NCBI RefSeq assembly: GCF_001447785.1
Contig: NW_015164664.1
Location: forward strand, 712,274-776,273
DNA: 64,000 bases
Origin: Gekko japonicus
Lineage: Eukaryota
Direction of reading: 5' to 3'
The notes below the pieces were generated by a model, which made no database searches, was not told the DNA's origin, and worked only from the letters and a program-made list of their open reading frames with translations. A program made the translations under genes and the position numbers. Of this stretch, positions 35,301 to 38,300 are shown piece after piece; position 1 is the stretch's first letter, and each line of letters starts with the position of its first letter.

Positions 35301-38300
35301 NNNNNNNNNNNNNNNNNNNNNNNNNCATGAGAAATATGGTAACGGGTTTGTAACTGCCACAGCAAAACCATTTGCCTCCATGCCTGAATCTTCTGTCTTG
35401 TGGCTTCAGAAACAGCTTTAAGTATTTTATGTACAAGCAAGTAATGTTAGAGAATATTTTATAGTCCTAGCCACAATTCTTTCAAAGAAATAAAGTTAAA
35501 GTAAATTAAGATGTAAAAAAAAAATAATTGGAGATACTTTATAGTTAAAGCTTCTAACTCTTCCTGGTTGTTCATTTTTTTCCTTTTTCTTCTTTGTTTG
35601 GATTGCAGCGTTCTGCTCTTCTGATGATGCGCTGTGATCCTGCAGTAGCGCAAAGGCTGCGCAGCGGAATTGCGCATTGCGTGCGATTGAGCCCTTTGTG
35701 AATGGCTGACTAGATGATTCATCTCTAACTGGAAGGCTCTTGAGCTCCATTCTGTAGGCTTTTGGATTGAATTGGGCTGTAAAGCATTTAGACTTCATAC
35801 TCAAATTTAACACTCAAGTTTCTACATGGGCCTGTGTGGTAGATTAATCAATCTGGTTGGCTGTTCACGGTCTCCAAGGGCATTCAACAAAGCGCAGCAG
35901 TTTGCAGCGAGGGCGCAGCGGCGTGCTGTTAGGGTGCGCAAGCGACTTCTTGCGCTTGCATTACAGGGACCTGAATCTTTGTGCAAACCTGTCATTTGAG
36001 GTTTTAGAGGCTGAAGTTAAGGAGATAGGTCAGGGTTCTGGAAAAGGGTGAGTTCAGGGTAGAAAATTCACAAGAGTTTAAAACACCCAACCACTAGTGT
36101 CTGAGATCATAAATTTTCCTTCTTTATATGTAGTTGATAAAGAATGTCAGCTTTCTGTGGTATTTTGGAAGAGGTTAACTGGGAGTTATGTTAATAGCAG
36201 CTTGCTAGCTAAATTGTTGCTTAAGCATGTGAGATTATAACTTCATTTGTTATTGAAGCAAGTTATGGATTCAGTAGAAAAGCAGTTGTAAGGTACTTCT
36301 TCTGGGAGAAGAAAATAAGGGCATAGAGTGTATTTCTGTGCAATGGACAGCATAACTGATAGTGGTGGATTTGCACTTGGGTTTTGGTTTGCGCTGGCGC
36401 AGGATCAACCAGCTGTTTACAGCGCATTAGTTTTGGCGCATGCTAGCCTATACTGCAGGATCACTTTTGGCTGGTTAGAGAAGGAATATTAACTGCAGTT
36501 TTTCTCTCACTTTTTTTTGTGCAAATATTCCCTTTCCCTGTATCTACCCATCTTTAACCCTTCCAAGGCCTGTTATTTGAAGGCAATTGAGACTCAACCA
36601 AATTTTGCAGTAGCGTGGAGCAATCTTGGCTGTGTGTTCAATGCACAAGGAGAAATCTGGCTTGCCATTCATCATTTTGAAAAGGTAATTGTAGGTTTTT
36701 ATATCCTGTGGCACATCTGCCAAAAATGCTTTACATCTGTGCCCACTTCTTCCTAAGCAATGATGGATGCACGTTGGCATATCTACATGTTGGTCAGATT
36801 GATGAATATGTGAATGCACAAGGGCTTGTGTGCCTAAATCAAGCAGTCTGTAATAAATAAAGTTAATACATGCTTGGAGAATAACAGAAATGGAAATTAT
36901 GGATTGGTTCATATGGAAAATTTCTATGGAGGAAAGGATTTCCACTAGTGGCAATGACTTCCTTGCTGCAGCCTAGAAGGCTACTTCTGGAAACAGGGAC
37001 CCCCCCCCCCCCCCCGGAACAGTGTGAGGAGGGTCTGCCATGAGAGTGAGGAGAGAAATTTGAAGTGTGTTCTCTTTAGGGACAGATCTTTCCTGTCTTC
37101 CTCAACCCTAAACATAAGTTTTCTCTAATCTCTGTTCGGATGAATGTTTTAAATATGTGTCATTTTGCTACTACTGGTGTCTTTTTCTACACAATTAGAC
37201 ACAGGTAATGTTCTTGCATCACAAGCCGGAGACAAAGCATGTTCAAGTTTGCCATATTCAGCTAAACAGTAGGTTCATTATGTACGGTAGTAAAGTGAGT
37301 AAGATGTGTTTTCTTCAATATCCTAAGGCGGTGACTCTTGACCCAAACTTCTTGGATGCTTATATTAATCTGGGGAATGTTTTGAAAGAAGCACGTATAT
37401 TTGACAGGTAAGTGGATAAAATACTTACTTTCTCAGTACAATAATTGGCTCACTGCCTGTGCTGACTAGGACTGTTGACACATGGGTCACCTGGTTGCCT
37501 TATTAGTAAATGTATTAGATGTGATTTTGAACAAACAACTTCTTCTAAAATCTGAAAAACTTTTAAAGTCAGTTTTGTTAAGCATAGTTTTTCTGTATCT
37601 GTGTTTTCTGGCTACATTAAAGTGGAAGCCCTCAACAGTAGTTGCTTTTCAGTGGACTCCATTATCAGCTATGTACCCTCCCTAGCAATAAATATAGTTC
37701 CGTATTTTGTGGGTACATGGTGAACATTAACATCAACAGCTGTCCATCTCTTTGCAGAGCTGTAGCTGCCTATCTACGGGCCCTGAGTCTGAGTCCAAAC
37801 CATGCAGTTGTGCATGGCAACCTGGCCTGCGTCTATTATGAGCAGGGCTTGATTGACTTGGCAATTGATACCTACAAGCGTGCTATTGAACTGCAGCCGC
37901 ACTTCCCTGATGCTTACTGCAACCTGGCCAATGCGCTCAAGGAGAAAGGCAGTGTAAGGATCCACTTCTTGCTTACAGTACTCGTTCAGCTTGGGTGTGA
38001 AGGGTTGTGAGGTGACAGTCACACTGGCAGAAATCAAATCTATTTTCTTGGTAGTTGGGAATGTAGTGGTTTAAAAACACTCACACACCTTGGTGGAGCT
38101 TGCCATCTTAATCAGGGCATTTACCATTGGTGTGGGAGCATTTCTAGAAGGTGGGTTGTTACTTCTGCTTGATCCAATAGCCTGTTTAAAGTAGCTTGTT
38201 ATTCTATATTGTGGGAAAAGATTCCTCCCAATTCTGGTACTGCATGCTCTGCATAGCATCAACAACTTGGAGTTCTACCCCCCTTTCCTTAAACAACTAT

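What the first reader, a model, noticed from the sequence alone, without database searches (positions are those of the whole stretch)
35600..36480. Candidate long-range RNA structure in the detained OGT intron 4
Seen: GTGATCCTGCAGTA (35634-35647) is the exact reverse complement of TACTGCAGGATCAC (36451-36464), about 800 nt downstream and about 100 nt before the exon 5 acceptor. A rough chance expectation for a 14-bp inverted match in a 3-kb intron is ~0.02, and neither arm looks like a repeat. The helix can extend through AGGCT(35654-58)/AGCCT(36445-49), bulging out GCGCAA. Further correctly nested short pairings are CTGGTTGG(35853-60)/TCAACCAG(36405-12), AGCGCA(35891-96)/TGCGCT(36390-95) and GTGCAAA(35981-87)/TTTGCAC(36370-76). 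Known: mammalian OGT intron 4 retention responds to O-GlcNAc level through an intronic silencer/decoy exon. Inference: a second, structural module downstream of the silencer could gate the 3' splice site.
Basis: partly seen in the sequence, partly recalled or inferred. Interest (0 to 1): 0.85.

Follow-up and report, generated by a model that had tools for sequence, protein, structure and literature searches.

The report
OGT decoy exon long-range RNA helix
In a gecko's OGT gene, 14 bases inside the conserved "decoy exon" of the regulated intron 4 are perfectly complementary to a conserved stretch just upstream of the likely exon-5 branch site; another sauropsid keeps the pairing and mammals probably do, so it may be a real RNA bridge in OGT splicing control, but this is not proven.

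Summary
Bases 35634-35647 are the exact reverse complement of 36451-36464. Chance gives such a match in about 2.7% of shuffled introns.

The 5' arm is not downstream of the silencer. It lies 26 nt inside the predicted decoy exon (35609-35753), in an 84-nt island identical in a second sauropsid (L015). The 3' arm lies in the conserved last 220 nt of the intron, the non-coding homologue of the mammalian "mOGT leader". It ends 23 nt before a branch-point-like motif.

In L015 the helix keeps all 14 pairs, with one U-A changed to G.U. ORF translations from mammal-like contigs suggest the same pair is C-G there. If so, that is one compensatory change, but the two sides come from unlabelled, unlinked sequences. 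Flanking complementarity extends the duplex to about 37 bp (-40 kcal/mol).

Against it:
- Substitutions in predicted inter-block pairs preserve pairing no more than chance.
- Ensemble folding prefers a local hairpin over the decoy 3' splice site.

Verdict: a plausible, testable long-range RNA bridge, about 40% likely to be functional. I found no description of it in the held literature.

The parts
33543..33611 (+). OGT exon 4 (…[23 protein letters not shown])
   Evidence: Translation. Aligns in order with krill OGT P0150. 100% identical to L015, third codon positions included.
33612..36567 (+). Intron 4 (2956 nt), homologue of the detained OGT intron. Contains the N run 35139-35325, which was not filled.
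   Evidence: GT at 33612 and AG at 36566-67. Alignable to L015 at 73-86% except 36017-36347.
35585..35608 (+). Pyrimidine tract and AG of the predicted decoy-exon 3' splice site
   Evidence: Read from the sequence. Lies in the island 35584-35667, which is identical in L015.
35609..35753 (+). Predicted decoy (poison) exon, 145 nt, followed by a weak GTAGGC donor at 35754. It has an in-frame TGA at 35699-35701.
   Evidence: Size and position match the human 143-153-nt decoy inside ISS intron nt 1771-2297 (PMC12017769, PMC6097662, PMC5588854). Frame and stop. There is no RNA evidence here.
35634..35647 (+). 5' arm of the long-range helix H2
   Evidence: Identical in L015. In the minus-frame translation it reads ...RYCRIT..., which becomes RYCRVT or RYCRAT in other vertebrate ORFs.
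35610..35662 (+). 5' strand of the extended H2
   Evidence: Consensus fold, gecko minimum-energy fold, duplex energy -40.6 kcal/mol, flank tests.
35600..35640 (+). Local hairpin H1. 35600-35609 pairs with 35631-35640 and buries the decoy 3' splice-site AG. It shares 7 nt with the 5' arm, so H1 and H2 exclude each other.
   Evidence: Pair probabilities are about 0.7 in gecko and 0.95 in L015. The local fold is -19.9 kcal/mol.
36017..36347 (+). Variable spacer. It cannot be aligned to L015 and has no CpG.
36348..36567 (+). Conserved 3' block of the intron (86% identical to L015). It is the non-coding homologue of the mammalian mOGT leader region.
   Evidence: P0288 translation. PMC4901358.
36388..36407 (+). 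Alternative partner (B1) for the 5' arm: 9 + 8 bp around a 3-nt internal loop
   Evidence: pair I5. Duplex energy -31.0 kcal/mol. Ensemble probability about 0. At least one mismatch is inferred in the mammal ORF P0288.
36451..36464 (+). 3' arm of H2
   Evidence: L015 has a single change, A36460 to G, which gives G.U.
36436..36487 (+). 3' strand of the extended H2
36487..36493 (+). Branch-point-like TATTAAC (TACTAAC in L015), 75 nt before exon 5
   Evidence: Read from the sequence. An inference, not tested.
36499..36567 (+). AG-free pyrimidine-rich tract and the exon-5 acceptor
36568..36684 (+). OGT exon 5 ([10 protein letters not shown]…HHFEK)

Best explanation
The two arms form a long-range intramolecular RNA duplex (H2) in the detained OGT pre-mRNA. 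It has a 14-bp perfect core, extendable to about 37 bp. It ties the 5' part of the decoy exon to the conserved block that ends just upstream of the exon-5 branch site, and loops out about 800 nt that contain the decoy 5' splice site.

Inferred mechanism:
- The bridge shortens the effective distance between the decoy 5' splice site and the exon-5 branch site from about 740 nt to about 150 nt. It also places a stable helix next to that branch site. Both effects would favour the non-productive engagement of the decoy with the real 3' splice site that holds the intron.
- Seven bases of the 5' arm can instead close a local hairpin (H1) over the decoy 3' splice site. H1 and H2 could therefore act as alternative states.

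Shown: the complementarity, its location, and its retention in one other sauropsid. Inferred: formation in vivo, the direction of the effect, and any link to O-GlcNAc level.
For: 1. The complement is a perfect 14-mer. It reached this length in 2.7% of intron shuffles. In a post-hoc test, 0 of 400 shuffles of the two conserved blocks reached 14.
2. Both arms lie in the most constrained parts of the intron. The 5' arm is in an 84-nt island identical between gecko and the L015 host, whereas third codon positions of exons 5-7 are only 54-69% identical.
3. In L015 all 14 pairs persist. The only change in either arm, A36460>G, turns U-A into U.G.
4. Decoy-region ORFs from other vertebrates give I>V at this codon in 11 mammal-like variants, which means T35638>C. 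A mammalian mOGT-type ORF (P0288) has Gly (GGN) at the partner position, which means G at 36460. Together these read U-A, U.G and C-G at one pair.
5. That same T>C would put a C.A mismatch into the rival hairpin H1, and the B1 partner acquires a mismatch in P0288. H2 is therefore the best kept of the three pairings.
6. The flanks are more complementary than shuffles: outer P=0.054, inner P=0.043. The extended duplex is -40.6 kcal/mol in gecko and -40.0 in L015.
7. H2 closes the gecko minimum-energy folds in three contexts and the two-species RNAalifold consensus.
8. The last ~150 nt of intron 4 are 90-100% conserved among mammals although the mOGT reading frame is broken in most of them (PMC4901358). 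In gecko the region cannot code (stop at 36490-92). Some non-coding constraint is needed.
9. [quoted passage not shown]
Against: 1. There is no verified covariation. The C-G state joins a 5' arm and a 3' arm from different, unlabelled ORF translations, third codon positions are unknown, and the listing of cluster members gave no accessions to link them.
2. Only one independent nucleotide sequence (L015/L016, 99.9% alike) was available, and both arms are nearly invariant in it. Retention of pairing therefore follows from sequence conservation alone.
3. Almost the whole intron is conserved, so conservation of the arms is not specific to them.
4. In a less biased test, each species' own minimum-energy fold was checked against the other. 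5 of 16 and 6 of 15 changed inter-block pairs stayed paired, against 5.4 and 6.0 expected.
5. Partition-function probability of H2 is about 0.09 in gecko and 0.01 in L015, where H2 is absent from the minimum-energy fold and H1 has p about 0.95.
6. The 3' arm has diverged at 2-4 positions in fish- or amphibian-like ORFs, and their 5' arms are unknown.
7. The match was picked post hoc in a very large scan.
8. There is no RNA-level evidence at all.
Confidence: 0.4

Rival explanations
1. Coincidence between two independently constrained elements. The 5' arm is conserved because it is part of the decoy exon, with its enhancer, silencer and factor-binding sequence. The 3' arm is conserved because it belongs to the regulatory region upstream of the exon-5 branch site. 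The complementarity has no function.
For: A 14-mer match arises in 2.7% of shuffled introns, and 4 such matches occur in this window alone. The whole intron is conserved, so retention in L015 is expected anyway. Changed pairs are kept no more often than chance. Ensemble probability is low. The region is rich in self-complementary GCGC and CTGCAG motifs, which inflates predicted pairing.
Against: The match falls between two of the few near-invariant islands, which makes it much rarer than 2.7% (0 of 400 block shuffles). The flanks also pair better than chance. The one variable pair changes in pair-compatible ways, U-A, U.G and a putative C-G.
Confidence: 0.33
2. The relevant structure for the 5' arm is the local hairpin H1 (35600-35609 with 35631-35640), which masks the decoy 3' splice site and tunes decoy recognition. 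The distal complement is irrelevant.
For: H1 dominates the ensembles, at 0.7 and 0.95. It forms first during transcription. It covers the AG that U2AF must bind for decoy function (PMC6097662). It lies wholly inside the invariant island.
Against: The mammal-like T35638>C change would create a C.A mismatch in H1, because the Ser codon in the translation keeps A35602. H1 is weaker (-19.9 kcal/mol) than H2 (-40.6). Nothing varies in H1 between gecko and L015, so there is no test here.
Confidence: 0.12
3. A DNA-level element. The arms are two oppositely oriented copies of a binding site for a DNA-binding protein (intronic enhancer, insulator or internal promoter), so the inverted symmetry is read on DNA, not RNA.
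For: Binding sites work in either orientation. The conserved blocks are unusually CpG-rich for an intron, with 17 CpG in 35564-36016 against 0 in the spacer. Transcripts starting within intron 4 are discussed for mammals (PMC4901358).
Against: The L015 state (T in one copy where the other copy implies C) is a G.U in RNA but makes the two DNA copies differ. Complementarity continues into the flanks with G.U pairs, which have no meaning on DNA. The ISS works as an RNA-level, orientation-dependent splicing silencer (PMC5588854).
Confidence: 0.08
4. The arms are the terminal inverted repeats of an old DNA transposon or MITE.
For: Two inverted 14-mers lie about 800 nt apart.
Against: There is no target-site duplication next to the arms. 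Each arm is single-copy in the window. Both arms and much of the interior are conserved across deep sauropsid divergence and apparently into mammals.
Confidence: 0.02

Closest known systems
OGT intron-4 intronic splicing silencer / decoy exon (Park et al. 2017, PMC5588854; Parra et al. 2018, PMC6097662; Govindan & Conrad 2025, PMC12017769)
   Same: Same gene and same intron. A cassette of about 145 nt with a pyrimidine tract and AG, a weak GT donor and an in-frame stop. It sits about 2 kb into a ~3-kb intron and is extremely conserved.
   Different: The held texts of those papers that I term-searched (PMC5588854, PMC12017769, PMC12864184) contain no mention of RNA secondary structure or base pairing, and two targeted full-text searches of the held library returned no paper describing such a structure in OGT intron 4. 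The helix would add a cis partner outside the 526-nt ISS, in the part of the intron that the published deletions did not cover.
Pairs of conserved complementary regions (PCCRs), long-range RNA structures that control splicing (Kalmykova et al. 2021, PMC8052449), including the BRD2/BRD3 poison-exon structures (bioRxiv 10.1101/2023.10.08.561383)
   Same: A near-perfect complement of at least 10 nt between conserved intronic or exonic regions less than 10 kb apart, in a gene whose unproductive splicing is regulated.
   Different: OGT does not appear in the main texts of these papers or in the held supplementary files of PMC8052449. No supplementary file was held for the RIC-seq paper PMC10573301. 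Here one arm lies inside a decoy exon that is recognised but rarely spliced, and the output would be intron detention, not exon inclusion or skipping.
Helices that bring the 5' splice site and branch point together in long yeast introns (from general knowledge, not checked here)
   Same: A stem loops out most of the intron and shortens the effective distance from donor to branch point.
   Different: In yeast this promotes productive splicing. Here the donor is a decoy, and the proposed outcome is a stalled complex.
Mitochondrial OGT (mOGT) leader encoded at the 3' end of human intron 4 (Trapannone et al. 2016, PMC4901358)
   Same: The 3' arm overlaps the homologue of the mOGT start-codon region. 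The segment is highly conserved.
   Different: It cannot code in gecko: ATA stands in place of ATG, and there is an in-frame stop at 36490-92. The conservation must therefore be non-coding.

Membership tests
OGT intron-4 decoy exon / ISS | Lies in the intron between the exon ending …RLEEAK and the exon starting ACYLKAIE… | tested here: met
   The mammalian mOGT-type ORF P0288 reads from this intron straight into ACYLK.
OGT intron-4 decoy exon / ISS | Cassette of about 143-153 nt with a 3' splice site (pyrimidine tract + AG) and weak GT donor(s) | tested here: inconclusive
   The sequence gives AG at 35607-08 and GT at 35754, so 145 nt. Translations imply the donor GTA is kept in L015 and in mammal-like ORFs.
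OGT intron-4 decoy exon / ISS | Introduces a premature stop if included | tested here: met
   In the exon-4 frame there is a TGA at 35699-35701.
OGT intron-4 decoy exon / ISS | Deep vertebrate conservation | tested here: met
   An 84-nt island is identical in L015. 16 related ORF variants come from other vertebrate contigs. Fish were not tested.
OGT intron-4 decoy exon / ISS | Needed for intron retention; U2AF binds the decoy 3' splice site | not testable with these tools
   Known only for the human gene.
Conserved long-range RNA duplex (PCCR-type) | Near-perfect complement of at least 10 nt between conserved regions of one pre-mRNA | tested here: met
Conserved long-range RNA duplex (PCCR-type) | Compensatory substitutions across species | tested here: inconclusive
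   One pair (35638:36460) reads U-A in gecko, U.G in L015 and a putative C-G in mammals. The mammal state joins unlinked ORF translations. The global test of changed pairs equals chance.
Conserved long-range RNA duplex (PCCR-type) | Thermodynamic preference for the duplex | tested here: inconclusive
   It is in the gecko minimum-energy folds and the consensus fold. Its ensemble probability is 0.09 and 0.01, and it is absent from the L015 minimum-energy fold.
Conserved long-range RNA duplex (PCCR-type) | Proximity-ligation or probing support, and a splicing effect of disruption and rescue | not testable with these tools
   Needs PARIS, RIC-seq, DMS and minigenes.
mOGT coding leader | Open frame from an ATG in intron 4 into exon 5 | tested here: not met
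   The exon-5 frame opens only at 36493, after a stop. ATA stands at the homologue of the start codon.
Transposon terminal inverted repeats | Target-site duplication and dispersed copies | tested here: not met
   The flanks differ, and the arms are unique in the window. The genome-wide copy number was not tested.

The most novel reading that the evidence does not exclude
The 5' arm is the moving part of a two-state RNA switch. In state H1 it closes a hairpin over the decoy 3' splice site, the decoy is not seen and intron 4 is spliced. In state H2 it pairs with the block next to the exon-5 branch site, the decoy is exposed and held against the real 3' splice site, and the intron is detained. 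An O-GlcNAc-sensitive factor (for example SFSWAP, a helicase or a U2-associated protein) would shift the balance. This would be the 'additional cis-acting sequence' that the isolated silencer lacks.
Probability: 0.12. Interest if true: 0.85.

Novelty: new member of a known kind. Interest (0 to 1): 0.55.

Why it matters
OGT intron detention is the main feedback loop that keeps cellular O-GlcNAc constant, and it is the best-studied decoy-exon system. Two questions remain open. How does a decoy exon stall the flanking splice sites? Which cis sequences outside the 526-nt silencer make the block reversible?

A conserved duplex joining the decoy exon to the region beside the exon-5 branch site gives a concrete, cheap-to-test answer to both. 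The tests are arm mutants, compensatory mutants and antisense blockers in the existing full-intron reporter. It would also explain why the "mOGT leader" is conserved in animals where it cannot code. If false, the finding is only a chance complement in a very conserved intron.

Tried and rejected
So there are no cross-species read data and no RNA evidence of retention or decoy junctions. After that call no letters of 35582-35667 were sent to any search tool. They were only folded, aligned and handled in scripts. For the same reason I ran no Rfam scan and no DNA-pattern search with the arms.
3. A protein search with a krill OGT returned only arthropods.
Exons were searched singly by reference.
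5. An exon-5 peptide alone was too short for the search for related loci. With an alignment, the metagenome scan gave 80 loci, of which only L015/L016 carry a homologous intron. Genome contigs and viral contigs gave nothing useful.
6. The listing of cluster members gave no accessions, so 5'-arm and 3'-arm ORFs could not be linked to the same species.
7. No contig was taken for human, and none was fetched for the mammal-like ORFs. One cluster (P0392, 192 contigs) could include human-derived ORFs. I used only the translations already returned and searched no further with them.
8. Supplements of the key OGT papers are not held.
9. RNAduplex on whole blocks was uninformative.
10. A large nested 'panhandle' of both conserved blocks, suggested by RNAalifold, was rejected by the substitution test.
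11. The transposon-TIR and mOGT-coding readings were rejected (see membership tests).
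Full report
**What is there.** The window carries OGT on the + strand. Exon 4 is 33543-33611, exon 5 is 36568-36684, and intron 4 is 33612-36567 (2956 nt, with an N run at 35139-35325 that I left alone). The exons align in order with a krill OGT, and the hits are named O-GlcNAc transferase.

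The reported 14-nt inverted match (35634-47 with 36451-64) is exact, and each arm is unique in the window. The small extension AGGCT/AGCCT is exact. Two of the three nested pairings are exact, and one has a G.U. The repeat finder also shows a second possible partner for the 5' arm at 36388-36407.

The window as a whole has four such matches within 3 kb, so length alone proves little. What makes this one unusual is where it lies.

**Location.** In human, the detained intron 4 holds a 526-nt silencer at intron nt 1771-2297 (PMC5588854). Its core is a 143-153-nt decoy exon with weak splice sites (PMC6097662, PMC12017769).

In the window:
- A strong pyrimidine tract plus AG ends at 35608.
- A weak GT donor follows at 35754.
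- The 145-nt cassette starts at intron nt 1998.
- It has an in-frame TGA.

I take this as the decoy-exon homologue. That is an inference from size, position and conservation, without RNA evidence.

The 5' arm therefore lies 26 nt inside the decoy exon, not downstream of the silencer. The 3' arm lies in the last 220 nt of the intron. Its continuation translates as the recognisable homologue of the mammalian mOGT leader (compare P0288), yet in gecko the frame is closed. Trapannone et al. showed that this segment is 90-100% conserved among mammals although the reading frame is broken in most (PMC4901358). The 3' arm ends 23 nt before a TATTAAC (TACTAAC in the second species). That motif sits 75 nt upstream of exon 5 and is followed by an AG-free pyrimidine tract, so it is the probable branch site.

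**Other species.** Most routes to other genomes failed (see Tried and rejected). A metagenome scan with an exon-5 alignment gave two 99.9%-identical host contigs, L015 and L016, with exons 4-7 and a 2962-nt intron 4. By its leader region the host is neither human nor a mammal.

Gecko and this host differ at 31-46% of third codon positions in exons 5-7. Even so, the intron aligns at 73-86% everywhere except 36017-36347. Perfectly conserved islands include 35584-35667, which contains the 5' arm, and 36378-36409.

In L015 the 5' arm is unchanged. The 3' arm has one change, A36460>G, which turns U-A into U.G.

**Indirect evidence from translations.** It returned ORFs from other vertebrate contigs. 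There are three kinds:
- A sauropsid-like group reads as gecko does (…RIT…).
- A group of 11 variants, one seen on 192 contigs and probably mammals, reads …RVT…. This means T35638>C.
- One ORF reads …RAT… (A35637>G and T35638>C).

A mammalian mOGT-type ORF (P0288) has Gly at the codon that holds 36460, so G there, and G at 36452.

If both data sets are mammalian, pair 35638:36460 is U-A in gecko, U.G in L015 and C-G in mammals, and all other determinable positions remain compatible. This is the classic signature of a maintained pair. However, it joins unlinked, unlabelled translations and leaves third codon positions open. Fish- or amphibian-like ORFs show a diverged 3' arm, and their 5' arms are unknown.

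**Energetics.**
- The 14-bp core is -24 kcal/mol. With flanks the duplex is -40.6 kcal/mol in gecko and -40.0 in L015, about 37 bp.
- The flanks, which were not part of the selection, pair better than shuffles (P=0.054 and 0.043).
- H2 closes the gecko minimum-energy fold in three contexts and the two-species consensus.
- The ensemble gives H2 only about 0.09 in gecko and 0.01 in L015.
- The first seven bases of the 5' arm prefer a local 10-bp hairpin (H1) with 35600-35609 that buries the decoy 3' splice-site AG.
- The inferred mammalian T35638>C would mismatch H1 but not H2.

**A less biased conservation test.** I took each species' own minimum-energy fold and asked whether the other species' substitutions keep the pairs. 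For inter-block pairs, 5 of 16 and 6 of 15 are kept, against 5.4 and 6.0 expected. There is thus no support for the large nested panhandle that RNAalifold draws. Only the H2 core, and perhaps one inner helix (35968-86 with 36371-89, 2 of 3 changes compatible), survive.

**Literature.** In the held texts I term-searched (PMC5588854, PMC12017769, PMC12864184) I found no mention of secondary structure or base pairing in OGT intron 4, and two targeted full-text searches returned no paper that describes one. OGT is not mentioned in the main texts of the PCCR papers, nor in the held supplementary files of PMC8052449. No supplementary file was held for PMC10573301. Park et al. note that the isolated silencer represses but does not respond to O-GlcNAc drugs, so further cis sequences are needed. 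The responsive reporters carry the whole intron.

**Verdict.** The best reading, at about 0.4, is a conserved long-range duplex that bridges the decoy exon and the branch-site-proximal block. It may alternate with a local hairpin over the decoy 3' splice site. The main rival, at about 0.33, is a chance complement between two independently constrained elements. The claim is new for OGT as far as the held literature shows. It belongs to a known class of long-range splicing structures and can be tested directly.

Noticed in passing
window 35600-35640: A local 10-bp hairpin (35600-35609 with 35631-35640) buries the predicted decoy 3' splice-site AG. It dominates the folding ensembles of both species and competes with the long-range helix for 7 bases.
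   Followed up: partly
window 36487-36567: A branch-point-like TATTAAC (TACTAAC in L015) lies 75 nt upstream of exon 5 and is followed by an AG-free pyrimidine tract. This is a distant branch site of the kind seen at regulated acceptors.
   Followed up: no
window 33537-33619: Exon 4 and its immediate flanks are 100% identical to L015, including all third codon positions, while exons 5-7 are 54-69% identical at third positions. This points to extra, non-coding constraint on exon 4.
   Followed up: no
window 35327-35418 and 34706-34778: Further perfectly or near-perfectly conserved intronic islands (92 nt and ~73 nt). The first abuts the N run 35139-35325, which was not filled.
   Followed up: no
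window 35564-36567: CpG and GCGC motifs cluster in the conserved blocks: 17 CpG in 35564-36016 and 4 in 36348-36567, against none in the 331-nt spacer. There are 12 GCGC between 35629 and 36436, most of them kept in L015. They could be a protein-binding motif or structure-forming palindromes.
   Followed up: partly
window 15263-15314: A perfect 23-nt inverted repeat with a 6-nt spacer (15263-85 / 15292-15314), the longest perfect hairpin in the window.
   Followed up: no
window 3039-3344: An open segment whose translation looks like a TAF1 exon (recognised from memory). TAF1 is the upstream neighbour of OGT in mammals, which suggests conserved synteny.
   Followed up: no
L015 4133-5485 vs window 36685-37327: Intron 5 is about twice as long in the L015 host (1353 nt against 643 nt), while intron 4 has almost the same length in both (2962 against 2956 nt).
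   Followed up: no
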